The notes under the pieces are model-generated. The model saw only the letters and a program-made list of their open reading frames with translations. It did no database searches and was not told the origin of the DNA. A DNA stretch of 64,000 bases, from assembly GCF_001194135.2 (NCBI RefSeq), contig NC_068986.1, positions 66,319,454-66,383,453 on the forward strand, read 5' to 3'. The DNA is from Octopus bimaculoides. Its lineage: Eukaryota. Position numbers and translations under genes: made by a program. Within the stretch, counting starts at the first letter, position 1. Every line of letters begins with the position of its first letter. This document shows positions 9,129-63,651 of this stretch, piece after piece.

Positions 9129-12100
9129 GTAAGTTATGTATGACAGTCCGGTTTTCTTATCGCTTTTTCCATTCAACTTACATAATATTTTCTATTTCTG
9201 ATTTTGTGTGTATGTATTATTTTTTTTTTTTCTTTTTAACTTCTGAGTATATTTAACATTGACGCCAGCTCGTTGTCTAATTTTTTAAATCTCTCTCTCT
9301 CTCTCTCTCCTGTCTTTCTCTTTTATTCTCGTTTCTATGGAATCCAAATGTTGTTGAAGAGATGCATCAAATGTACGTGATTATTGGCACGATTTAATTC
9401 TAGATTCTCCTGAAGAATCTCTTTTTCTCTCTCCTGCAATCGGTCAGATGAAGAATTTTGCGAAATGTTTAAACATCTACCAAAAATAACCTTTCGTTTG
9501 CTCTTTTTCTTTCGACAGAATGAACCGCATTTTCTCCTGCTATTATATATATGTATATATATATATAAATTTTTATCTTTATTTTTTACTATCCAAGAAG
9601 GAAAAGTAGTAATTTATATTAAACGCATCTAGTTATTTCATGTCTTTAAAAAAAAAAGAAAAGAAAAGAAGTAGTAATGATTCTCTTAATTATATTATTT
9701 AGCAGTTCTGAAATTCAGAATTAAAATAGATAAAGATCGAAGAAATTTTGAATCTATTTTCTATTTATATCTAAAGACCTCATTGACATTCTAAGCTTTA
9801 CGTATCCCATAACAACTTTCCAGCATAGTTATTTTTCTTTAGTGTGGAGGTTGTTAAGCCGTGCTTAAATATGCATAGAAGAAAATGATGCCTACCACAC
9901 ACACGTACATCACTGAGTGATAATCCGATAGAAGTAAATACAGAAAAATAGCACTGAGAAAGTTGGCGCTATGCAAGTTATTTAAAGTATGGTAGTTGTG
10001 TTTTTAGCTCGATTATATATTAAAAGGAAATGAACAAGGTTTATGTCATAAAGGTTAGCACATCTTATGTAATCATGATGGGAAAATTAACGTCTTAACT
10101 GTAACAAAACTTTACACAGTAATGTCATAAAATTGATAATTAGCTACACTACATTTTTTTTTTAAAGTTTTATAATGATCTGGTTAGTGTAATGATATAA
10201 GCTTGTCATGAATATATTAACGGCTTATTCTTTTCCTATTGTGCTATGGAAATGTGTATGAAAACCAAGTTCCCGACTCCGCAATTTGATTGTATACAAC
10301 CACCCACACATCTATTTAATGTTTTGTTGTTGACTTTTTTTTTTCTTCCTTCATTCACTTATACTCATTAGCTGGGCGAAATTTTGCACGATCCAACAAA
10401 TGTGCATTCTGTGAATGCTCGATCTATTAGAAATAGTAGCTAAATCTCCCTCAAAATACCCTTTCTGTCTTAAGAAAAAAATGGTACAATAAAAAAAATG
10501 TGTTTTAAACAACGGGATGGTCGTAGCTGAAGTGCCTTTGCTCAGCTCTACTTAATCAGGTTTGAGTAGGAGCTAGACATTAACGAAACTCAGCTCTTGC
10601 AGACCAACACTGTGTGCCTATGTACATGTGTCTATGTAAGATCCTAACACTATCTTTTATTTCACTGGTTTATTCTAATTACCTATTAGAAACTGCTGCA
10701 ATCTTTCTTTACCAAATGTCAATTAGAAACATATGGGACGTTTATTATCCCAAAATTTAAAACGTGCTGTGAATAGACAGAATATTGCAGACCTTTGGGG
10801 GTTTCTGAATGAAGCTAGTTACTAAACAATTTACTGTACACAGTGTCAGAATATCTCGCTGTGTTGAAACCACTCTTACAGCAGTAGCTTCACACTAAAT
10901 GTTTATCTCATCATCGTCAGCTACCACAGGTTTGTATTTAAGAAACCTAAGTAACTTTAATTCAATGTTGTTCCAGATGGAGTATAAGGAACCATCTTGT
11001 ATCAGCACCTTCCAACCAAGGCCCTCTTAGAGGAATTTTATCAAGGGGTCCTTTTGAGCCACTTTTTTTTTTTTTTGAGGTCCCAGGAATTTCTCAGGTA
11101 CAGTGCCCCTCCCCCACCTCCCAACAGTAAAACTTCATTGAAAGAGAAATTGTTCAGGTCAATAAAGTGAGTCTACTTAATCTCTGTAAAAGTTGCGACC
11201 AAATTTCTCTCAGATCACCCTAGCATCTTCAAAAAGAAAAAGAAAATAAAAGACAGACATGTTGAATAAAGAAATCCCAACTACACTTTACCTAAAAATA
11301 ACATGGAGATGGTCATAGCTGGAATGCTTTTGATTGTAAGTCTGCTTAATCAAAGTAGACCTGGGGTTAAACAACAGTTGTATGTATTTCTATGAAAGGC
11401 CATCCATTTATGCTGTTAGAGCTTTTCTTCTAGCATTCCTGCAAGCATTTGTTCTTTTTACAACAATGATAGAATGACTTGGATAGTTTTCATGAAAAAC
11501 TACCCAAATTAAAAGTGGATCACTGGCATCTATAAGGACTATACATAGAGGGAAACTCCTGGGGATGATTCAAGTAGTGTTGCTGTAACTTGCCCTGAAA
11601 AATCCTGGTACCTGTTTATTCACAGCTTCATGTAGAATTAAATATTGTATATAGAAATACAAAAAAAACACTCAGTAGATTTTAAATCATTACTCTTGAA
11701 CCAGCAGTCCTACACATCATTTCTATTTGGGTTTTGGGTATTTCTTGATGCCTTGAATTTTTTCTTCACTTCAGAACTGTGAATAACAACCAGGATGTCC
11801 TGACACTGCGTTAGTTTTTCTTCTGGTGTTTGTAAATTTTCTTTATAAGGAGTTAAACAAGGGTGTTGTATACCTAAGGCATTCACAAACCTTGGGAGTC
11901 AGTGCTTTACATTCAAGCAGTGTGAATGTAATTAATAGCTAAGTAATATAGTACATATTGCTAGATTCTTTGATCAAAATTTCTATAACCCAGATATGAA
12001 TAACTGAGATGATAACATGATCAATGAAATGGCATTTGGCAAATATAGTAAGAGATTATTCTCCCGTGATCATGTAGATTCATTCATTTACTGTTGCTAT

Positions 12101-14395: not shown

Positions 14396-15968
14396 NNNNN
14401 NNNNNNNNNNNNNNNNNNNNNNNNNNNNNNNNNNNNNNNNNNNNNNNNNNNNNNNNNNNNNNNNNNNNNNNNNNNNNNNNNNNNNNNNNNNNNNNNNNNN
14501 NNNNNNNNNNNNNNNNNNNNNNNNNNNNNNNNNNNNNNNNNNNNNNNNNNNNNNNNNNNNNNNNNNNNNNNNNNNNNNNNNNNNNNNNNNNNNNNNNNNN
14601 NNNNNNNNNNNNNNNNNNNNNNNNNNNNNNNNNNNNNNNNNNNNNNNNNNNNNNNNNNNNNNNNNNNNNNNNNNNNNNNNNNNNNNNNNNNNNNNNNNNN
14701 NNNNNNNNNNNNNNNNNNNNNNNNNNNNNNNNNNNNNNNNNNNNNNNNNNNNNNNNNNNNNNNNNNNNNNNNNNNNNNNNNNNNNNNNNNNNNNNNNNNN
14801 NNNNNNNNNNNNNNNNNNNNNNNNNNNNNNNNNNNNNNNNNNNNNNNNNNNNNNNNNNNNNNNNNNTATATATATATTTATATTTATATACACACACACA
14901 CACACAAACAAACAATGTATACACTCACATATATATATACATATCTGGATTGTTTCATTTGATCTTACATAATTGTCACTTTCCTTCTCATTATTACTAA
15001 CTAATGAAGAAACTGCCTTTTCTTGCCTGTTACTTACTGACATAGTTTATTTTATCGACCCCCTCCCTCTGAATGTTGATAAAATAGAAGTGGAGCTATT
15101 AGGCTAGTAAACTAAAATATAGGAAGTATGTTTAGTCAGTTTCAACTCGTCTCACTGAAAATAGGTTCTAATTTTATTTGACAGTTGAATGATTATGATC
15201 TATAAGAGCTTTGAGCTATTAAAATTAATTACTCCATGAATATTTATAAGAATAAAGAGATGCTAGTTTAGAAGTTATATAAATTCATTATGCAACAAAA
15301 ATAGTTTAGTAATTAGAAGAAAGCACTGAAATGTGTATAAGATTAAAGTTTTAATCAAAATCTTCAAAAAGCCTCTAGGATGTTGCTCCGTGTAGGGTAA
15401 TGTTTTAAATACTAGTTATATAAAAAGTACAATCAACAATATTATTAAGTGCTATTCTTGGTGAACTGATATTGACCTACACTGAGAACACTGAACTGTT
15501 AAAAGGATATTCAGTCTAATTATAAAATTGGTGAAGCAAACAAATAAATCATTAAAAATAGTGTCTGCTTGTATAAATTGGGAATATAGGATTCTGTTAA
15601 GTTTGATATTTAAGCAAACTAATCAATGCAAAATATTGGGAATTTTGTAATAAACCTCTAATGGAAAGAGAATAATTGGATATTTTACAATTCTACTAAG
15701 GATGTCCTATCAAGCTTTTATTCCCCAGGTTCAATAAATTAAGTTGTTTACTTCATATCACACTATTACAATAACTCAATGTATAAAGTAACAAAGAAAG
15801 TATTACACTCTGCATTGCTATCCTACAAATTCAGTCCCCAAGTCCCCTTAGAATTATGAAATTGAAATCAACCAAATCATGTATGCAGTTTTATTAAGAT
15901 GTCAACTATCCTTCTTATAAACTCTTTCTTCTACATATTCTCCTTTTACACACACACACGCACGCGCG

Positions 15969-22967: not shown

Positions 22968-23062
22968 GCCTTGGTAGTGCAGTAGGCAGCGCGTCAGTCT
23001 CATAATCTTGATCTAACAGCCGAGTAATCTGAAGGTCATGAGTTCGATCCTCACCTGGGGCA
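22968..23062 (+). tRNA. Elongator tRNA-Met(CAT) with a 22-nt intron (23005-23026); possibly decaying
   Basis: Spliced 73-nt sequence closely matches metazoan tRNA-Met-e as recalled; anticodon at 23001-23003; intron lies after base 37. Confidence 0.9.
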
Positions 23063-23069
23063 GACTTTA

Positions 23070-23483
23070 GGCGCAGGAGTGGCTGTGTGGTAAGTAGCTT
23101 GCTTACCAACCACATGGTTCAGGGCTTGTTCCTACTGCGTGGCACCTTGGGCAAGTGTCTTCTACTATAGCCTCGGGCCGTCCAAAGCCTTGTGAGTGGA
23201 TTTGGTAGACGGAAACTGAAAGAAGCCCGTCGTATATATGTATATATATATATGTATGTGTGTGTATATGTTTGTGTGTCTGTGTTTGCCCCCCCCCCCA
23301 GCATCCATTGACAACCGATGCTGGTGTGTTTACGTCCCCGTAACTTAGCAGTTCAGCATAAGAGACCGATAGAATAAGTACTAGGCTTCCAAAGAATAAG
23401 TTCTGGGGTCGATTTGGTCGACTAAAGGCGGTGCTCCAGCATGGCCACTGTCAAATGACTGAAACAAGTAAAAGAGTAAAGAG
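23070..23483 (+). mobile_element. tRNA-derived SINE, family A (young, CpG-rich copy)
   Basis: ggcgcaggagtggctgtgtggtaag A-box-like head, internal microsatellite, tgactgaaacaagtaaaagagtaaaga tail. Confidence 0.9.
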
Positions 23484-23605
23484 GTAAATAAACTCAATCT
23501 TAATGAAAAAAAAAAAAACACAACAACCATGTTTGCAGAACAACTGTCTCTTTGAAGCTTGAATCAGTCACAATAAAGCCCTCCATTCGGCACAAGGAGT
23601 CCAGA

Positions 23606-24400
23606 TTAAGCTGTACACATCTTGTAGAAGAACACTTGGTTGACATCTATTTCCCTTGAAATACACGAAGGGCAAATATAATCATCACAAAGACCACACA
23701 GCAACCAAACTTCATTCTTCCTGCCTTTGTATCTGCTCCAGAATCTCTTGCAAATGGAGCACTCAGTCTCTTCTTCCTCTGAATCATCTGCACTATCATA
23801 GTTTTCACACTCTGCATTACCTGTTTTCTGCCATTTTGGAGCAAGTTATCCTCTTTCCTTTCCACTCTTAGACTTTTGTTGCTTCTTTGGTGTATTTTTA
23901 CTTCTCTTTTCCTCCTGGAATAATGATGCAATCACCTTCTTCCTCCTTGATTCTGTGTAAATATCAGTAATTACATGAAACAATGCTATTAAATCACTTT
24001 CAGATATTGGCACATATTCATAGGGTGTGGAAGACTTCTTTAGTTCTTCTTCTCTTCTATTTATAAAAGTCTCTGTGCTATGTCTTAAGTGACCCATTAT
24101 ACGTCACTTTCGAATTTCATTGACTGTCAGAATTTTCAAGGATATATTGGTTAATCTAGTGACTGAAATCTGTGATCCAGAACAACGAACTTGAAAAGTA
24201 GTCATCAGGAAAAATACAATATTTATATTCACAGGAAGGATGATGCTATAATGTCATACTTCCTGTTCTGGAGTTGAGAGAAACTGATAAATATCTGGCA
24301 AATGACCCAATATGCCTCTCCTTCCCTATTGTTTGTGTTGTGGCTCCTTCACAGTTGAATGGCTCGTGATTGGTAGGAAGGGCACGCTGAAACTTGTTCC
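23606..24400 (-). mobile_element. Pogo-like transposase C-terminal relic with acidic tract and PHD-like finger
   Basis: DSADDSEEEETECSICKRFW...VWLLCGLCDDYICPSC...FFYKMC; upstream PVNINIVFPDDYF-like segment; in-frame stop at ~23846. Confidence 0.55.
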
Positions 24401-25908: not shown

Positions 25909-25965
<57 letters not shown>

Positions 25966-26386
25966 NNNNNNNNNNNNNNNNNNNNNNNNNNNNNNNNNNN
26001 NNNNNNNNNNNNNNNNNNNNNNNNNNNNNNNNNNNNNNNNNNNNNNNNNNNNNNNNNNNNNNNNNNNNNNNNNNNNNNNNNNNNNNNNNNNNNNNNNNNN
26101 NNNNNNNNNNNNNNNNNNNNNNNNNNNNNNNNNNNNNNNNNNNNNNNNNNNNNNNNNNNNNNNNNNNNNNNNNNNNNNNNNNNNNNNNNNNNNNNNNNNN
26201 NNNNNNNATATGTATATATATATATATATATAAGAACCTTTTTTTTTCTTGACTTTTGTTGTGTTTGGCTTTTATTTCTTTTCTAAATTGTTTTTTTGGT
26301 GTATAACTTATTTTCTATGTGCAAAAACACTTTTTAAAGCTTTTGTTGCTTCTGCTTTCTCTTGTTTCAACAGACATTCTAACAAA

Positions 26387-28277: not shown

Positions 28278-30943
28278 CATTATTTACATTCGATAGATAT
28301 TTGTCCTCATCTTGTTTGTTGTTAACACATTTCGGCTGATATACCCTCCAGCCTTCTTCAGGTATCTTGGGGAAATTTCGAACCTGGGTTTTCATTCCTA
28401 AGGTATTTTTCGATGTTATTATTATTATTGTTATTGTTCAGGTCACTGCTTGGAATCAAACTCGGAATCTTGGGGTTAGTAGCCTGCACTCTTAACCACT
28501 ACGCCATATGCCCATGGCATATGGAGTGAATTTTAGGGCTTACAAATCTAATATTTTCCTATCCTTCCTTAATACCAGTTCCCATATGCTGCTCATATCT
28601 GCACTCGGTCTGCTTAGGAAGTTGTTGTGTCCTAGCATATGTGCTGCTTCTTTTAGTTTTCGTATTTTCCAGTGGTGTTCTCTGTCTATTATTTTAACTT
28701 CATCCCACACGGGAAGGCGGTCTCCATTTTTCCATACATGATCAGCTATACCTGATTTATCAATATCTCCTCATGTCACTGCTCTGCGATGTTCGTCTAC
28801 CCTTATTTTGAGGGAGTGGCATGTTTCGCCTTTGTATAACCTACCACCGCTGCATGGGATGGAGTACACACAGTCTTTAGTCATATTCTCTTCTATTGGT
28901 GGTTTTATTCAAAGAAGATATTTGTGAAGTGTTGTATTACTCTTGAATACTGTCCTGATGTCATATGGGCCACATATCTTTTGTATCTTTTTGGAGAGGC
29001 CTTTCACATAGGGTAGACAGACTGTGGACAGTTTATAGGCCTCATCCTCTCTCTTCTTCATAATTGGAGTGGATAGTATACTTTTGGGGTAGTTGTTGCT
29101 TAGCAGATCGTTATTGAGCTTGATCATTTCTTCATGGTGTGTACCACGATCGCTACTTATATTCTTTGCATGATGTTTTAGGCACTGAGCAATCTCTCTC
29201 TTTACACTGTATGGATGGTGGGAATTGAAGTTGAGATATCATCCAGTAAAGGTCGGCTTGCGGCATACGGATGTCCTGAATCCATACTTGGTGCATGTTA
29301 TTAATACGTCCAGCTGATTGTCTTTTTCCTTTTCCATTGTGAACTGTATAGATGACTTTATTGAGTTCACATGATCTAACAGCACTTGGACATCTTGGAG
29401 GGGCCAGAGTATGAAGGTGTCATTAACATATCGCAGCCATAGGGTTGGTTTTGGTGGTGTTGATCCTAAAGCCAAATTCTCAAAGTATTCCATGTATATA
29501 TTGGCTATTATCGGTGATAATGGCGAACCCGTAGCTAAACCCTCTTCTTGTCGATATATATCAGTGTCCATACTGAAGAAGGTAGTTTCTACACAGAAGA
29601 TCAACATTTCCATCAAGTTTCTTATTGGTATACTAGTGCATTCTTTTAGATTGGTGTGTCACTAGTTTTTCTTGTATCACCGATAGTGCTTCACCAGTTA
29701 GGACTTTGGTGAACAGGCTTATCACATCTAGACTCACCATCTGATTGGATTCAATGGGGGTATCCTTGATCAATTCTGTGAAGTGGGTGGAATTCTTCAC
29801 GTACGATGTTGACTTTCCTGCTAATGGACTGATTAATATCCACAAGGAAGTGGCTCAGTGGATGACATGCTGAACCTCTACGGCTCAGTAAAGGTCTTAA
29901 TGGAATACCATCCTTGTGAATCTTAGGAAGACCGTACATGTGTGGTAGTTTACTGTAGTGTTGAGTCAGTTGTCTGTACTTCATTGGTGTGAAGTGATCC
30001 TTGTTCTTGATCAGGATCTGTGACAACTTCCTCTCTGTTTTCAGAGTTGGGTTTTTCTTTTCTTTGCTGTAGCTACCATCACTTATAAGACTTGCCAACT
30101 TTTCAGGATAGTCAGACTTGTTCATCACTACTGTAGCATTTCCTTTGTCCGCTGGAAGTATTATGATGGAATTGTCACTCTGTAGTCTTTTGATAGCGAA
30201 CTTTTCTTCCTTACCGATGTTTGGTTTAGGAGGTTTTGCTTTTTTCTAGTACCTGTCTCACTTTCCACCTTAGTTCATCTCCCTGAGCTTTTGGTATCTT
30301 TATGGCTATCTCTTCAATAAGGGCTATTATGTCCAAGTATGGAATACGCTTGATGATTGTCGCAAAGTTGAGATCTTTGTTCAGTACTGCTTCTTCAGAG
30401 CTTTCTAGGTGTCGGCTACTTACATTAATTACTGCTTTCACAGGTGAGTGACGGACTCTAGTCTTCATTCTCTGACCTTTGAGTTTCATAAACTTCTTAA
30501 TCTAGCATGTCTTCACCATTTCAAATTCTTTCATGTATGACTTTTCCAGATCTTGTTGGATTCTCATTCTATCATCATCTCTGGTTATTTTCCTGCGTAA
30601 TGAAGATGACCTCTCTTTGATTTCGTTATTTAATTGATGTTTTTTTCCAATTGTTGTAATGGATCCTCTCACGGACGAGAGCATGTCCTGCCCTTTCCGC
30701 TACTCTTCTAGCTTTATGTGAATTGACTGGTGTCATTATATTCAAGCGAGGTGGTATTAGCTTTGCGTCTCTACATCTACATAAGAAAGTTAGATGGTTT
30801 GAAAGATGAGCTAGTTTTTGATGCAGTTTCTCTATATGTCTCCATTGAAATCTAATGTCAGTTCCGTACCTATTAGATAATACAGTTCTATATTTAATAG
30901 ATGTAAATAATGTAAATAATTCCTCGTCTCTTAAATATGGAAC
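28278..30943 (-). mobile_element. Full-length decayed Penelope-like retroelement (RT + C-terminal GIY-YIG)
   Basis: RT motifs YGLPKIHK, GLATGSPLSP, RYVNDTF; GIY-YIG CVYSIPC...YKGETC...R..EH; ORF stop at 28540; TGTCATTCTATATT duplicated at 28264-28277 and 30944-30957. Confidence 0.92.
28324..28366 (-). ncRNA. Hammerhead motif in the PLE 3' terminal repeat (stem III deleted, likely inactive)
   Basis: GATAC CTGAAGA A GGCTG..CAGCC GAAA TGTGTT; lacks the CGT present in the 126-171 copy. Confidence 0.65.
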
Positions 30944-35170: not shown

Positions 35171-35550
35171 AGTCATGGCTGTGTGGTAAGAAGTTTGCTT
35201 CTCAACCACATGGTTCCAGGTTCAGTCCCACTGTTTGGCACCTTATTTTCTACTGTAGCCTTGGGCTGACCAAAGCATTGTGAGTGGATTTGGTAGATGG
35301 AAACTGAAAGAAGACAATCATATATATATCCATGTGTGTGTGTCTTTGTGTCTCTCCCACCACTGCTTGAAAACTGGTGTTCGTGTGATTACATCTCCAT
35401 AACTTAGCAGTTTGGCAAAAGAGACTGAAAGAATAAGTACCAGCATTTACAAAAAAATGTACTGGGGTTAATTCATTTGTCTAAAATTCTTCAATGTGGT
35501 GCCCCAACATGGCCACAGTCTAATGACCGAAACAAGTGAAAGATAAAGAT
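35171..35550 (+). mobile_element. tRNA-derived SINE, family A
   Basis: Matches 23070-23483. Confidence 0.85.
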
Positions 35551-38304: not shown

Positions 38305-39306
38305 AAGAATCCTATGTTAGCTTCTGGTCACTAACTTAATAATGTCAAGTTTATTTTACTAAATTACTGCAATTTTTTTAATTTTCAAAATTAACTGAAG
38401 CACATAGACTGTGTTTCATTGGGTTGCTAAAGGTTGAATTTATAGAAGAAACATAACTCTGTCACTTTTTAAAGATGTTTTACAGTTTTAAACTGTTGTA
38501 TTATTTGGTTTCATCAATATTTGATGGCATTTTGAGCCAGTTTGTCTTTGTTTAATAAGCTTTAATTAACCATGATGTGACCTATTATGTTTTGGTAAGC
38601 TTCCCATATAAAATTTATCACCTTCCCTACCATATTCTAGGTTCAGTCCCACTGCATGGCACCTTGGGCACGTGTCATCAACTATAGCTTCAGGCCAACC
38701 AAGGCCTTGTGAGTGGATTTGGTTGACAGAAACTGAAAGAAGCCAATCGTATGTGTGTGTGTTACCACTGTTTGACATCTGGTGTTGGTGTGTTTGCGTC
38801 CTCTGTAATCTAGCAGTTCAGCAAAAGAGTCACATTACTTTATGGTGAAGTGGACTTAGACAGTCACTATGTAGAACTTGATAAAACAAATGCCAGTCTG
38901 AAATATGTACTGGAGTTGATATAATCAACTAAAACCTTTGAAAGCAGTGACCCAACATTGCAGCTCTTTAATAACAACACAGTGAACATATATATATATA
39001 TANNNNNNNNNNNNNNNNNNNNNNNNNNNNNNNNNNNNNNNNNNNNNNNNNNNNNNNNNNNNNNNNNNNNNNNNNNNNNNNNNNNNNNNNNNNNNNNNNN
39101 NNNNNNNNNNNNNNNNNNNNNNNNNNNNNNNNNNNNNNNNNNNNNNNNNNNNNNNNNNNNNNNNNNNNNNNNNNNNNNGTAAAAGATTTTTTATTCCAAC
39201 ATGCACACACCACACACACACACATTCAAGCCTGTATTTGTTATGGTTTATGTGTGTAAAATACAATATGCTCTATTTATCATTGCATGGAAATACATGG
39301 AGTCTA

Positions 39307-43665: not shown

Positions 43666-45049
43666 GTAAGTTTGTGACACCTTTTTTTTTGTATACTTTA
43701 CTGTAATTTCTTGTATAGTAAATAAATTAGAGGTAGTCAATGTAGATTGAAAATTAAACCTTTTCTGAATATTCATACTCAGTTTTCATAACCTTAAACA
43801 GATGAGATACATCTATCTATAGGGAGGGTACTGGTCTATCACAAGTAACTTTTCTTATGCAACACATTTAATTCAGTACTGAAAGCCAGCAAAATAGTAA
43901 ACTCCATTGGACTACTGCCAACACTTGTGAATTATACCATCCTGTGGTACTCATTTAGGACACTGTTGATTTAGATGTGATCTTAATGTATTTGCCATGG
44001 ACACAACACAGTACTGGTGACACAATCTCAAAGTGTTATGCCATTGGTTAGTTTTCTAGTTTCCTATTGACTTGGCTAACTTTTTATAGAAACTCAAATG
44101 AATAAAACACAATATCCAAAGATATGGTTTTTGAGGTTGTGTATACTTTCTAAATTAATGTTGAAATTGTAAAATTATCATCATCATGACCATCACAAAT
44201 TTCATATGACCATCTTTGCATCTTATCCTGTAAGCAAGTATCTAACAATCAAAATTATGTGTTCCTGCAAAGAAACTGCTGTTCTTATTCAAATAGCGAT
44301 AGATCTCACTATCTCTATATTCTAGAAGTTTGGGATAAATTGCAGCATATATTGCCTGTCATGCAGGGTATGTTTCAGGTGCAGGTGATGTTGATGTTAG
44401 ACCAAACTCTGTACTTTTTCCACTCAATCAATGTCTTAAAAATTATTCTTGGAAAAGTTTTATGTTTATTTGATGCCAAGAAATGAGTAAATGCCTTTGT
44501 ATTATAAAAAATTTCAAAAATGCAAGTGGCAGTTTTAATTAGAAATTACTTCACTTGCATTTGACAAAGGCAGGTGCAATATTTACACGTTATTTTAGTT
44601 ATCAATAGTTGCGATAATATATATTAGGTATGGTCAAGGTGCAAGCATGGCTGTGTGCTAAGGTTTGCTTCCTCATCACATAGTCCTGGGTTGAGTCCCA
44701 CTGCATGGCACCTTAGGCAAGTGACATCTACTATAGCTCCAGACCAACCAAATTCTTGTTGGTGGATTTGATAGACAGAAGCTGAAAGAAGCCTGTCGTG
44801 TGTGTGCTTATATCTTCTTGTCTTGACATTGCATGAGAGATGTAAATAGTTATCTTTGTCATACAAGAAGTATCATTCATTTTCATTATTCTGCCGGAAC
44901 ATGCCCGGCTATGGAAAAATATATTACTTTGCTTGGAATCAGGTGAGGATTGGTGACTGGAAATGATATCTAGCCATAAAAATTCTGCCTTAATAAACAC
45001 CATCTAACCCATGCAAACATGAAAGAATGGATGTTAAGATGATGGTAAT

Positions 45050-50389: not shown

Positions 50390-51775
50390 GTATGCTTTTC
50401 TTGTTTCCCTTTTTTTTCTCATTACTCTTTATTAAGAAACAGTTATTGTGAACTTACATTATTTCAGAACTGATCACATGAACTTACTCTTCATCTACCC
50501 ATGTTTTTCTCACAGTCCCTGATCTGCAATTGTTCAAACCCTAGTATCAATGAATCAATCTGACCAGTCATCAAGGTCATAGTCTAAGGTTAAGGCCACT
50601 TCCTTTGACTTATATATCAAAAATTTCTTCTTATTTTATAAAAACTTTCCATAACTAAGCAATGATTGAGCTCCTACAAATTAGAAACAGCAGCCAAATC
50701 TCAGTTGCATCTCATCATCTTAAAAGGAAACAGACACATTAGAAAAGATAATTCTAGATACCATCTCCCAAAAATGGGATGGTTTAACTGCTGGAATGCT
50801 TTTAATCATAGGTTTGCTCAACCAACTACTACTTTGTCTTTTTTTTATGCTACCTTCTGACCCCCTGGGTGCGTTTAGTAGAGTATACTCTGTTGTAAGC
50901 TTGCTAAAAAATATTTATTAGCAACAGAATCAATATTAGTACCGAGAAGTAATATTTATCCACACTTAAACATGGATGTTCTGTTAGAACAAACTATACT
51001 GTGGGAGATAAAACTCCCCACTAGCAATTTAAACAAGAGTGCATTTTGCACCAAAAGGCTGAGATGAGAGTTTCTTTCATGGTAACTGCTACTGTATACT
51101 TTGTCCTTAATGGACTGTTTCCTACTGCAAGACATGAGTTCCATTTTATTCCTGTTTTCAACTACCAATCTTGATGGAATAGGTTAACTGAGTACAGGCG
51201 TTTTGGCATCATAGACTGACACATACAGAGAAACAGACAGGCAATCAGAACTATTAAAATTTATTGAAATGATAAATGAAAGAGATAAAATATGGAGTTA
51301 GCTCATTTTTACATGTCATGCATACATAGAAAAGATTATTATTATTATTATTATTAACAAAAGATTTATTTTAAATATCGCAAAATGAAGCCTTCAACTT
51401 TTCAGTCAGTAATTATGAACGTCTCAGTTTTGTTTTTTGGTTGTTTTTTTTTTGCTCATTTAGTTCTTATGTAGAAGAAAAACTAAATATTTTCTGTGCA
51501 AAAGTGTTTCATACAAAATGGGTTTTGTGCAGAATTAACAGTGCCTTGCTCATTTGAAACAATACTGCCCTGTGTCAAAAGTCAAATTGCTGACTTTGGA
51601 GAGTGTAACTAGGATTAAAACTTTCTCATTTATACCAACAATGTAATGAATTATGTCTACATGTTCAGAATGAGAAAAGAGCAGCCATCCAATACAATAT
51701 AAAAACTAAATTGCATTAAGAATGAACTTTATATTTTCTTTTATACAATGTTGTCTTATTTTATTTCTACATCAG

Positions 51776-51940
51776 GTGCTGTGTGTCCTCTTGAGGAACT
51801 CTGTGATATTGCCCATAGATATGGAGCATTGACATTTGTGGATGAAGTTCATGCAGTTGGTCTGTATGGAGAGAATGGAGCTGGCATTGGTGAAAGAGAT
51901 GGCGTCATGCATAAAATGGATTTAATCACTGGGACTTTAG
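51776..51940 (+). CDS. ALAS: ALAS coding exon 7
   Basis: [14 protein letters not shown]...[13 protein letters not shown]...DLITGTLG. Confidence 0.95.
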
Positions 51941-52065
51941 GTAATTCTTCAAAACAAAATAGTTTTACCACTAGTGTGCATTCATCAGGTTGTTGTCTTC
52001 TGGTTTTGTGCTTTTATTCATGCATTGTTGAGCTTAGGTTAAATAATTCCGTAGTAGATAATAAT

Positions 52066-52794
52066 GTGTGGCTGTGTAGTAAGAAGTTTGCTTCCCAGCC
52101 ACACAGTTATGGATTCAGTTCCACTGTGTGGCACATTGGGTAAGTTTCTTCTACTATAGCCCCAGGCCAACCAAAGTTTTGTAACTTGATTTTGTAGATG
52201 AAAACTAAAAGAAGCCCATTGTGTATATGTGTGTGGCAACTGGTATTGACTTATTTGTCTGTAACTTAGCAGTACAGCAAAAGAGCCCAATAGAATAAGT
52301 ACTAGACTTTAATACTTAAGTACTGGATGCTGGTTTGTTTGACCAAAACCTTTTGTGATAGTGCTCCAGTATGGCCACAGTCCAATGATTGAAACAAAAG
52401 ATAAAAGATTGTCAACACAACAATCAGTAAACTCAATGTAAAACTCTTAAAATTCTTAAAAGCACAGCCATGACTTTAAAGCTAAGAAGTTTACTCCACA
52501 ACCAAGTATTTCTAGGTTCCTTCTCACTGCATGATACTTTATGCAAAAGTTTATTACCTTACCTTCAAGTCAACAAAGTCTTAGAAAATTGGTAGAAGAT
52601 AACTGCAGAAACTCCTCCGAATATATATACAGGCACAGGCGTGGCTGTGTGGTAAGAAGCTTGCTTCCAAACCACATGGTTCCAGATTCAGCCCCTCTGT
52701 GTGGCACCTTGGGCCAGTGTCTTCTTTAATAGCCTCAGGCCAACCAAAGCCTTGTGAGTGAATTTGGTAGATAGAAACTGAAAGGACCCTGTTG

Positions 52795-52829
<35 letters not shown>

Positions 52830-53035
52830 TTGCCCCCACCCCACACCATCAATAGACAACCGATATTGGTGTTTATATGTCCCCATAACTTGGCAGTTCA
52901 GCAAAAGAAACCAATGGAATAAGTACTAGGCTTACAAAGAATAAGTGCTTGAGTCAATTTCTTCGACTAAAAAACCCTTAAAGGCAGTGATCCAGCATGG
53001 CCACAGTCAAATGACTGAAACAGGTAAAAGAAATA
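52066..53035 (+). mobile_element. Two successive SINE A copies (52066-52410, 52634-53035)
   Basis: Both match 23070-23483. Confidence 0.85.
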
Positions 53036-62040: not shown

Positions 62041-62603
62041 ATACCTTAATTTCAATACTGATTTTTATATTCAACCTCTTAACCTTGAACAAAGTTTGAA
62101 AAACAAAAAAGATTTTTCAATAAGATAATTATTTTAAATTTCCTACACTAAAGTACTTTTGAAATGTTTTAAAAATCAAAAATTAAAATAATCACTAATT
62201 TCACAGTGTGAAGAAGGAAAAGGATATCAAAAAAAAAATTTATTCCAGAATTCAGGTACAAATTAGTGCGGTTCTTGAAGCATCTTGCATAATAATACCA
62301 TTTGGTAGTAGTTATTTTCTCTCTAGAAGCTATCAACTGAATTATAATCAAGCAATGCAAGATAAAGTGCCAGTCAATTATAGGATTCTGTCACTGCTTA
62401 CAGTAGTAAACTGTCTATCACGACTGCTAAGAAGTCAAATGGACTGAACAGTCTTTACCACTACTTAAAGAAAAGAAAGCTACTCTTTCTCCAATATATT
62501 GGCTCATCCAGAAATGTATAAACATATTAAATTAAAATATAATGCACACATATGGATCATAAAAATCTGAAGACAATATTGATAAAGAACTTGGTTAAGT
62601 CAC

Positions 62604-62744
62604 CTTTCTGAATTGCTGCTGCCTCATTTAGTTTCCATTGTTCTGCTACATCATTTGCTAAGGGATCATCTGGGTTTGGGGCACTGAGTAGTGCTTGAAT
62701 AGACAGAAGAACAGTACGAATCTGCAATGCTGGACTCCATTTAT
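62604..62744 (-). CDS. UBE2N: UBE2N/Ubc13 penultimate exon; upstream exons not found in this window
   Basis: [38 protein letters not shown]; tttcag acceptor, G|gtgact donor. Confidence 0.95.
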
Positions 62745-63651
62745 CTGAAACATTTAAAGTAATCATACAAAATAACTGAGAATGGCTGGTACTACAATAA
62801 CAGTCGATTGGTAAACCAACAATAGTCAATGAAAATAAAGAAAATGTTAAAAATTTTTTAAATAGGTATGTTCATAATACACTGTAGGAATTTTATTTAA
62901 TTAAACACCTAATCAATTTTCTCTTAAATTTACTTCAACTATTGTTGTGATGTACCTACGTATAGTTACAACTGAGTGAGTATATCAACCAGAAAGGTAT
63001 GCAAATGTAATACAGTTCCTCACAAAAAAAAAAAAGTAACAGCCACTTCAAACACACTAACATGAAAAAATGAATATAAAACAACAAGAAAATTTAAACA
63101 AAAAGCAATGGTTTTTGCTAGAACATCTGCTATAATTACATATGGTCTGATATACAATATATTATTACATCCATTATACAATCAAGAATGACTTCTCTTA
63201 TGTGAATACAATGAATGTTTGAAATATTGCCAGCAACCAAATTCATACAAACACACATGGGCTAAAATAGTGATGAACACAAGATAAACTTGACCCCAAA
63301 AGCCAACCCTGTTATTCATTGTGTAAAATTAAATAATAAATATCAAATCTAATGTGCAAGATTCTGTCTAGCTCAACTGAAAAATAACCAAATATTCCCT
63401 AAAGTACTTGAAATTGTTGAGAAAATTATCAATAAAAAGCTTAAAAGAAGGATATACTTTTATGAAGTCTAACAAATTTAATGGTGTTATAAATTTAGTT
63501 TCAAATGTGTAATAGACTATAGGGGGTTCCTATAAGGTTGTTATCCACCCCTGATTGGAACTCTTCCGTATGACATGTACGCATGCTCAGTGACTTGCTT
63601 TAACTTCCGGCATCTATTTCTAGCATATAGAGTCCACTTTTGCTGGTCATT

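What the first reader, a model, noticed from the sequence alone, without database searches (positions are those of the whole stretch)
22968..23062. Intron-containing elongator tRNA-Met in an animal
Seen: a 22-nt insert ATCTTGATCTAACAGCCGAGTA exactly between bases 37 and 38. Its GAG can pair with C32-U33-C34, including C32 with the antepenultimate intron G. Known: this anticodon-intron pair is the hallmark of TSEN-spliced introns; animal tRNA introns are typically in Tyr-GTA, Ile-TAT, Leu-CAA and Arg-TCT, whereas Met-e introns are typical of plants. Inference: a lineage-specific intron gain that makes Met decoding TSEN/RTCB-dependent and could yield a circular intron RNA.
Basis: partly seen in the sequence, partly recalled or inferred. 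Interest (0 to 1): 0.78.

Follow-up and report, generated by a model that had tools for sequence, protein, structure and literature searches.

The report
Intron-bearing elongator tRNA-Met gene copy
This is a real methionine-tRNA gene split by a short intron, but the same kind of intron occurs in corals and many other marine animals, so it is not new to this lineage, and this copy looks worn and may no longer work well.

Summary
Window 22968-23062 (+) is an elongator tRNA-Met(CAT) gene with a 22-nt insert at the canonical 37/38 position, and its GAG can pair with C32-U33-C34.

The interpretation of a lineage-specific gain does not hold. One metagenome scan found at least 120 contigs with animal-type tRNA-Met genes interrupted at the same place. 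Across 80 distinct genes:
- Introns are 13-36 nt long.
- 74 introns start with ATC.
- 79 have G at intron position -3.
- 77 have a T4 terminator within 9 nt.

They sit in genuine tRNA clusters beside intron-bearing Tyr and Ile-TAT genes and intronless initiator Met genes. One such contig is from an anthozoan coral.

The window copy is an outlier:
- It differs from the consensus by four changes, all CpG transitions.
- One change, G49A, breaks a T-stem pair and is seen in 0 of 80 genes.
- It has four G-U pairs.
- It scores 37.8 Rfam bits against 50.5-57.3 for relatives.
- A SINE begins six bases downstream, with no TTTT for 740 nt.

It is probably a decaying or weakly active copy of an old intron-bearing family. 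No cephalopod DNA could be reached, so whether all Met-e genes of this genome carry the intron is untested. Recent papers do not list Met among metazoan intron-bearing tRNAs.

The parts
22968..23004 (+). 5' exon of elongator tRNA-Met, positions 1-37. Carries T5 (22972) and T11 (22978), both CpG-to-TpG changes relative to the family consensus.
   Evidence: ARAGORN -i; Rfam RF00005; comparison with 80 related genes: T5 in 7/80, T11 in 1/80.
23001..23003 (+). Anticodon CAT (positions 34-36).
23005..23026 (+). 22-nt intron ATCTTGATCTAACAGCCGAGTA at the canonical 37/38 position.
   Evidence: It shares the family's conserved ends (ATC start in 74/80, G at -3 in 79/80). Its interior is no more similar to other introns than shuffled interiors are.
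23022..23024 (+). Intron bases G(-5), A(-4), G(-3), which can pair with C34, U33 and C32. This is the anticodon-intron helix, leaving U(-2), A(-1) and A38 as the 3' splice-site bulge.
   Evidence: Sequence; the structure was written out and evaluated; GAG at -5..-3 in 50/80 relatives, G at -3 in 79/80.
23027..23062 (+). 3' exon, positions 38-73, including discriminator A73. Carries A49 (23038) and T67 (23056).
23038..23038 (+). A49, which gives an A:C mismatch with C65 (23054) at the first T-stem pair.
   Evidence: G49 in 80/80 relatives; pair 49-65 is G-C in 77/80.
23063..23068 (+). 6-nt spacer GACTTT between the tRNA and the SINE. It holds no run of four T; the next TTTT is at 23802.
   Evidence: 77/80 relatives have TTTT within 9 nt of the discriminator.
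23069..23519 (+). SINE copy of about 450 bp with a tRNA-like head, an internal (TA/TG)n tract and a poly(A) tail. It lies directly downstream and is not part of the tRNA-Met unit.
   Evidence: At least 10 copies in the window at 70-81% identity; every alignment starts at or after 23069 and none extends into the tRNA.

Best explanation
The locus is a DNA-level copy of the elongator tRNA-Met gene family. In many non-model animals this family carries a short TSEN-type intron between positions 37 and 38.

Inferred mechanism, from the established eukaryotic pathway:
- Pol III transcribes the gene from its internal A and B boxes.
- In the precursor, intron bases G(-5)A(-4)G(-3) pair with C34-U33-C32, so the 3' splice site sits in a small bulge next to the anticodon stem.
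- TSEN cuts at 37/38 and at the intron/38 junction.
- RTCB joins the exons and can circularise the 22-nt intron.

The intron is inherited, not a recent gain. Its position and both ends (5' AUC, G at -3) are shared with animal-type Met-e genes from many other sources, including a coral.

This copy is probably decaying or only weakly active:
- All four differences from the family consensus are CpG transitions.
- One of them breaks the 49-65 pair.
- The cloverleaf is about 10 kcal/mol weaker than with consensus exons.
- A SINE sits where the Pol III terminator should be.

What is shown and what is inferred:
- Shown: the gene, the intron position, pairing potential, family-wide conservation, and the copy's outlier status.
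- Inferred: actual splicing, circularisation, and loss of activity.
For: Gene and intron:
-.

Wide occurrence:
- That gave 135 matches.
- 80 distinct animal-type genes have introns of 13-36 nt, ATC start in 74/80, G(-3) in 79/80 and T4 within 9 nt in 77/80.
- Compensatory changes occur at pairs 5-68 (C-G 56, A-T 15) and 7-66 (G-C 55, T-A 23).

The relatives are real genes:
- They lie in tRNA clusters with intron-bearing Tyr-GTA and Ile-TAT.
- Those clusters also hold intronless genes 3-7 mismatches from the human initiator tRNA.
- Tandem arrays have the intron in every copy.
- No intronless Met-e anticodon arm occurs in any of the 128 loci.

Animal origin of the relatives:
- Coral-type exons differ from human Met-e at 1 of 73 positions.
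- The gene next to the tRNA on L086 has only anthozoan named homologues: Oculina, Stylophora, Montipora, Nematostella.
- A further 26 antisense ORFs through such genes lie on ENA contigs of up to 1.6 Mb.

This copy is an outlier:
- 37.8 Rfam bits against 50.5-57.3 for relatives with 16-36-nt introns.
- A49 in 0/80, T11 in 1/80, T67 in 2/80.
- Four G-U pairs plus one mismatch, against one G-U and no mismatch in 53/80.
- The canonical precursor structure scores -16.4 kcal/mol against -26.4 with consensus exons, and it is not the minimum-energy fold.
- The next TTTT is 740 nt downstream.
- The SINE starts at 23069.
Against: - No cephalopod or other mollusc genome could be reached, so the functional Met-e sequence of this lineage is unknown.
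- T5 and T67 also occur in apparently intact genes elsewhere (7/80 and 2/80). Only T11 and A49 may therefore be private to this copy.
- There are no non-CpG differences from the consensus in about 59 other exon positions, which hints at continuing constraint or very recent decay.
- An A:C at 49-65 and G-U pairs can be tolerated.
- RNase Z can release a tRNA from a read-through transcript, so a missing terminator is not fatal.
- Except for L086, the taxa of the metagenome contigs are inferred from exon similarity and neighbouring animal-type genes, not established.
Confidence: 0.7

Rival explanations
1. A fully functional Met-e gene. On this reading the four T/A variants are this lineage's normal sequence, and read-through into the SINE is tolerated because RNase Z trims the 3' trailer.
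For: - A and B box regions match the family consensus except C11T, and the intron ends are intact.
- There are no non-CpG substitutions relative to the consensus.
- T5 and T67 are seen in intact-looking genes from other sources.
- The Rfam score is still above gathering.
Against: - A49:C65 is found in 0 of 80 relatives.
- The combination of four G-U pairs and one mismatch is matched by none of the 80.
- The score is 13-19 bits below relatives.
- The cloverleaf is 10 kcal/mol weaker.
- There is no T4 for 740 nt, whereas 77/80 relatives have one within 9 nt.
Confidence: 0.27
2. One reading: a lineage-specific (cephalopod) intron gain in Met-e.
For: - Reviews based on GtRNAdb say metazoan introns are essentially confined to Tyr, Ile-UAU, Leu-CAA and Arg-UCU.
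- The interior of this intron resembles no other intron more than chance would give.
Against: - The same position and the same conserved ends occur in 80 distinct animal-type genes from many sources, including an anthozoan contig.
- Interiors differ among all lineages, so interior dissimilarity here says nothing about a separate origin.
Confidence: 0.06
3. Not an intron at all: a 22-bp insertion or local duplication (note ATCT...|ATCT) that disrupted a tRNA pseudogene. Alternatively, the tRNA-like head of a SINE.
For: - The intron starts with the same four bases as the 3' exon.
- The copy is degraded, and a SINE abuts it.
Against: - The ATC start is a family-wide feature (74/80), not a private duplication.
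- G(-3) and the A-I helix are preserved.
- None of the 10 or more SINE copies in the window carries the Met sequence, and all SINE alignments begin at or after 23069.
Confidence: 0.03

Closest known systems
Canonical metazoan intron-containing tRNA genes (Tyr-GTA, Ile-TAT, Leu-CAA, Arg-TCT), spliced by TSEN and RTCB
   Same: Intron one base 3' of the anticodon (37/38), short length, an anticodon-intron pair between position 32 and intron -3, and a 3' splice site in a small bulge. In the related contigs the Met-e genes sit next to intron-bearing Tyr and Ile-TAT genes.
   Different: A different isoacceptor, elongator Met, which recent surveys do not list for animals. The family has a conserved 5' AUC that repeats positions 38-40 of the mature tRNA.
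Plant nuclear elongator tRNA-Met introns
   Same: Same isoacceptor and same canonical position. Plants are the group for which Met introns are described (one search lists PMC11700998).
   Different: The exons here are animal-type, 7/73 from human Met-e. In plants the exons are joined by a 5'-phosphate (Trl1/RNL-type) ligase rather than RTCB (established knowledge). Common descent of the plant and animal introns was not tested.
Intron-bearing Met-e genes in coral and other marine-animal contigs (L086, L015, L049, L047, L016, L121 and others)
   Same: Same exons (0-7 mismatches), the same intron site, ATC start and G(-3). This is the family the window copy belongs to.
   Different: Those genes have intact stems, a T4 terminator within 9 nt, and 50.5-57.3 Rfam bits. 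The window copy has A49:C65, four G-U pairs, no nearby terminator and 37.8 bits.
tRNA pseudogenes decayed by CpG deamination
   Same: All four differences from the consensus are C-to-T or G-to-A at CpG, affecting 4 of the 7 CpG sites in the exons. The score is reduced and the terminator is lost.
   Different: No non-CpG change, no indel, and the intron signals are intact. If it is a pseudogene, it is a young or only mildly affected one.

Membership tests
Eukaryotic nuclear TSEN-type tRNA intron | Intron lies between positions 37 and 38, one base 3' of the anticodon. | tested here: met
   ARAGORN -i and the Rfam alignment. The DNA leaves a 4-nt sliding ambiguity because ATCT is repeated.
Eukaryotic nuclear TSEN-type tRNA intron | Anticodon-intron base pair between position 32 and the third-last intron base. 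| tested here: met
   C32 (22999) can pair with G(-3) (23024), flanked by U33:A(-4) and C34:G(-5). G(-3) is present in 79/80 relatives.
Eukaryotic nuclear TSEN-type tRNA intron | The precursor adopts the mature-domain fold, with the 3' splice site in a bulge. | tested here: inconclusive
   The canonical structure is feasible at -16.4 kcal/mol, but the predicted minimum-energy fold (-22.0) is different. The z-score against shuffles is +0.86.
Eukaryotic nuclear TSEN-type tRNA intron | Cleaved by TSEN and joined by RTCB; the intron is released and possibly circularised. | not testable with these tools
   Needs RNA data or enzyme assays.
Elongator tRNA-Met (cytosolic, animal type) | CAT anticodon and exons matching known elongator Met rather than initiator Met. 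| tested here: met
   7/73 mismatches to the human elongator sequence in PMC8216282. It is unlike the initiator, which is present intronless in the related clusters.
Active Pol III tRNA gene | All four stems paired. | tested here: not met
   A49:C65 mismatch (0/80 relatives have A49), plus four G-U pairs.
Active Pol III tRNA gene | A run of at least four T shortly after the gene. | tested here: not met
   Only TTT occurs in the 6-nt spacer. The next TTTT is at 23802. 77/80 relatives have T4 within 9 nt.
Active Pol III tRNA gene | Transcribed, and found in the mature tRNA pool. | not testable with these tools
   No expression data available.
tRNA-derived SINE (the tRNA as SINE head) | The tRNA-like part recurs joined to the SINE body in other copies. 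| tested here: not met
   At least 10 SINE copies occur in the window; none extends 5' of 23069 and no second Met sequence exists.

The most novel reading that the evidence does not exclude
The elongator tRNA-Met intron is a fifth old and widely kept metazoan tRNA intron, present at least since the cnidarian-bilaterian ancestor and lost in vertebrates and in the ecdysozoan model species. Its selected features are a 5' AUC that repeats positions 38-40 and a G at -3. These would point to an intron-dependent step on the precursor, for example an anticodon-loop modification. Current surveys built on GtRNAdb have missed it because non-model marine phyla are under-sampled.
Probability: 0.45. Interest if true: 0.55.

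Novelty: new member of a known kind. Interest (0 to 1): 0.36.

Why it matters
For this locus the answer is modest. It is one probably weakened copy of a tRNA gene, and by itself it says little about how the animal decodes methionine.

The wider by-product is more useful. Animal-type elongator tRNA-Met genes with a canonical intron and conserved intron ends are common in corals and many other marine-animal contigs. Yet recent papers state that metazoan tRNA introns are essentially limited to Tyr, Ile-UAU, Leu-CAA and Arg-UCU.

If whole-genome tRNA scans confirm this, the list of conserved animal tRNA introns needs a fifth entry. The conserved AUC start and G(-3) would then offer a handle for asking what intron-dependent step keeps the intron in place.

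Tried and rejected
- **Orthologous locus through the ALAS exon (51748-52143).** The protein search returned only short single-exon fragments, none identical and none from a cephalopod. Synteny could not be used.
- **Viral contig scan.** No matches.
- **Bacterial and archaeal genome scan.** Four matches: three chance hits, and one host-contamination contig in a SUP05 assembly.
- **Literature look-ups of contig accessions.** JAAUYG, OREC, FXLX and CRYPA gave nothing usable. One badly framed literature search was wasted.
- **Antisense-ORF search.** Using the antisense translation of the tRNA as a protein query found 26 more intron-bearing genes, none with the window's intron and none with cephalopod repeats.
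- **Named coral genomes.** Oculina and Stylophora loci could not be fetched; they are not on record.
- **Homology of the intron interior.** The best alignment score of 8.5 is no better than shuffled interiors (mean 8.2; 103 of 200 reach it). I claim conservation only for the two ends.
- **SINE-head idea.** Rejected.
- **Thermodynamic folding as support for the precursor structure.** The minimum-energy fold is not the cloverleaf.

Full report
**1. The observation**

The sequence at 22968-23062 (+) reads GCCTTGGTAGTGCAGTAGGCAGCGCGTCAGTCTCATA | ATCTTGATCTAACAGCCGAGTA | ATCTGAAGGTCATGAGTTCGATCCTCACCTGGGGCA.

- ARAGORN in its default mode finds no tRNA in the window.
- With introns allowed it finds exactly one: tRNA-Met(cat) with a 22-nt intron after position 37.
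- Rfam's tRNA model matches the same 95 bases end to end at 37.8 bits (gathering 29), with the insertion in the anticodon loop.
- The intron and the T-arm sequence are unique in the window.
- The spliced product differs at 7 of 73 positions from the human elongator tRNA-Met printed in PMC8216282 and does not resemble the initiator. It is an elongator Met.
- The last five intron bases are GAGTA, so G(-5)A(-4)G(-3) can pair with C34-U33-C32. This leaves U, A and A38 as the bulge at the 3' splice site.

One caveat: the intron and the 3' exon both start with ATCT, so the DNA does not fix the junction to the base.

**2. Is the intron lineage-specific?**

I scanned the public metagenome contigs for the animal-type Met-e anticodon arm interrupted by 8-38 bases (CAGTCTCATA-N-ATCTGAAGGTC). 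After keeping exons within 7 mismatches of the consensus and removing duplicates, 80 distinct genes remain.

- Intron lengths run from 13 to 36 nt.
- 74 of 80 introns begin with ATC.
- 79 of 80 have G at -3.
- 50 of 80 have GAG at -5..-3.
- The last two intron bases are free to vary.
- 77 of 80 genes have TTTT within 9 nt of the discriminator.

The stems show compensatory changes: pair 5-68 is C-G in 56 genes and A-T in 15, and pair 7-66 is G-C in 55 and T-A in 23.

These are real genes:
- ARAGORN places them in tRNA clusters beside intron-bearing Tyr-GTA and Ile-TAT genes.
- The intronless Met genes in those clusters are initiators, 3-7 mismatches from the human initiator.
- Tandem arrays have the intron in every copy.
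- No intronless Met-e anticodon arm occurs in any of the 128 fetched loci.

A second route gave more examples. I searched the protein collection with the antisense translation of the gene, because gene callers sometimes call ORFs through tRNA genes. This gave 26 further cases on ENA contigs of up to 1.6 Mb.

**3. Whose genes are these?**

- The coral-type exons differ from human Met-e at a single base.
- On contig L086, a 313-aa ORF 3 kb from the tRNA has an ALK/LTK glycine-rich domain.
- All its named homologues are anthozoan: Oculina patagonica, Stylophora, Montipora, Nematostella and Actinostola.
- A second coral-like contig (L128) has the same gene next to a decayed Met-e copy.
- Other contigs carry animal-type features, a C2H2 zinc-finger exon and ORFs whose sequence looks like LINE reverse transcriptase (my reading, not tested against a domain library).
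- From memory of JGI project numbers, many contigs come from gutless-worm and coral holobiont samples. I could not verify that with the tools.
- Some matches are clearly not animal. They have fungal-like or algal-like exons and were excluded from the 80.

So the intron class occurs at least in Cnidaria and in the bilaterian that owns this window. Its position and both its ends are conserved. The interior is not: the window's intron is no closer to any other intron than shuffled interiors are. A lineage-specific gain is therefore not supported. Inheritance from an old intron-bearing family is the simpler reading.

**4. What is special about the window copy?**

Against the family consensus it has four differences: C5T, C11T, G49A and C67T. 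All four are transitions at CpG, and they affect 4 of the 7 CpG sites in the exons.

- Three of them turn G-C pairs into G-U pairs.
- G49A creates an A:C mismatch at the first T-stem pair. A49 occurs in 0 of 80 relatives, T11 in 1, T67 in 2 and T5 in 7.
- The copy has four G-U pairs and one mismatch. In comparison, 53 of 80 relatives have one G-U pair and no mismatch, and none matches the window's combination.
- Its Rfam score is 37.8 bits, against 50.5-57.3 for relatives with introns of 16-36 nt.
- The canonical precursor structure scores -16.4 kcal/mol. It scores -26.4 when the four sites are set to the consensus.
- The predicted minimum-energy fold of the window sequence is not the cloverleaf.

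Six bases after the discriminator, a SINE of about 450 bp begins (23069-23519, with a poly(A) tail). The family has at least 10 copies in the window at 70-81% identity, and none is joined to a Met sequence. The spacer has only TTT, and the next TTTT is at 23802, 740 nt downstream.

Together these point to a copy that is decaying or at best weakly active. There are counter-arguments:
- No non-CpG substitution is seen.
- T5 and T67 occur in intact-looking genes elsewhere.
- RNase Z can process read-through transcripts.

I put the impaired reading at roughly 60%.

**5. Mechanism**

The steps follow the established eukaryotic pathway and are inferred here, not shown:
- Pol III transcription from the internal promoter.
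- Formation of the anticodon-intron helix.
- TSEN cleavage at both junctions.
- Exon ligation by RTCB, with possible circularisation of the intron.

The family-wide AUC at the intron start repeats positions 38-40 of the mature tRNA. The precursor therefore shows the same sequence from position 32 to 40 as the mature tRNA. This could serve an enzyme that acts on the anticodon loop before splicing, but that is speculation.

**6. What is known**

- PMC12168002 mentions kingdom-specific intron patterns for tM(CAU) without giving figures in the text.
- A phrase search for Met tRNA introns found only archaeal, plant and plastid papers.

The wide occurrence of the animal Met-e intron seems not to be discussed in the papers I could search, although it may well be visible in tRNA databases.

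**7. Limits**

No cephalopod or other mollusc genome could be reached.
- The ALAS-based route failed.
- Named coral genomes were not on record.

Whether every Met-e gene in this genome has the intron, and whether this copy is expressed, remain open. That the window is animal is supported by the ALAS exon, whose named matches are all animal.

**8. Verdict**

- The evolutionary reading as a lineage-specific gain is not supported.
- The functional claim, TSEN-dependent Met decoding, is untested and weakened by the state of this copy.
- It is a new member of a known kind.
- The more interesting lead is the apparently overlooked, widely conserved animal Met-e intron family.

Noticed in passing
L006, L014, L046, L067, L081, L101, L105, L112, L115 (for example L067 around 9566-9670): Met(CAT)-like genes from marine metagenomes carry a 15-17-nt insert at 37/38 and also a second insert of about 11 nt inside the T-loop (GTGGGTTCGAG[TGGTACGACCA]CCCCAC). 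ARAGORN does not call them. They look like two-intron tRNA genes, possibly algal.
   Followed up: no
L012, L019, L022, L023, L099, L116: Very dense tRNA arrays (up to 24-25 tRNA genes in about 4 kb) from pelagic marine metagenomes. They hold intron-bearing Met-e, Tyr-GTA and, unusually, Gly-GCC genes. The organism is unknown.
   Followed up: no
P0121-P0146 (for example L121 10001-10246): Public protein collections contain 'proteins' that are antisense ORFs read through intron-bearing tRNA-Met genes (..APGEDRTHDLQI-x-DYETDALPTALPR..). This is a gene-calling artefact, though it served as a way to find such genes.
   Followed up: partly
L127 (FXLX01000321.1, 1007 bp): A low-coverage contig in an assembly labelled 'uncultured SUP05 cluster bacterium isolate CRYPA' carries an animal-type intron-bearing Met-e gene identical to the one on L061. 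It is most likely host DNA in a symbiont assembly. The host could not be identified.
   Followed up: partly
L086 3471-4409 and 7589-7675; L128 10001-10900 and 11534-11623: In two coral-type contigs an ALK/LTK glycine-rich-domain gene lies next to a Met-e gene. The L128 tRNA copy is decayed.
   Followed up: partly
window 23069-23519 and about 10 other sites (2370-2722, 52631-53031, 35176-35549, 44637-44813 and others): An abundant SINE of about 450 bp with a tRNA-like head, an internal TA/TG microsatellite and a poly(A) tail, in copies 70-81% identical. The copy at 23069 sits where the tRNA's terminator would be.
   Followed up: partly
window 51748-52143 (+), 62557-62829 (-), 29239-30128 (-): From: a 5-aminolevulinate synthase exon (family confirmed by the matches), a ubiquitin-conjugating-enzyme (UBE2N-like) exon and reverse-transcriptase fragments (these two by my reading of the sequence, not tested). 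The window also has several runs of N, which are assembly gaps, for example near 14400-14900, 25960-26200 and 38990-39170.
   Followed up: no
family-wide, intron positions 1-3 (window 23005-23007): 74 of 80 animal-type Met-e introns begin with ATC, the same three bases as positions 38-40 of the mature tRNA. In coral genes the repeat extends to ATCTGAA. Whether this reflects a functional need or the way the intron arose is unexplained.
   Followed up: partly
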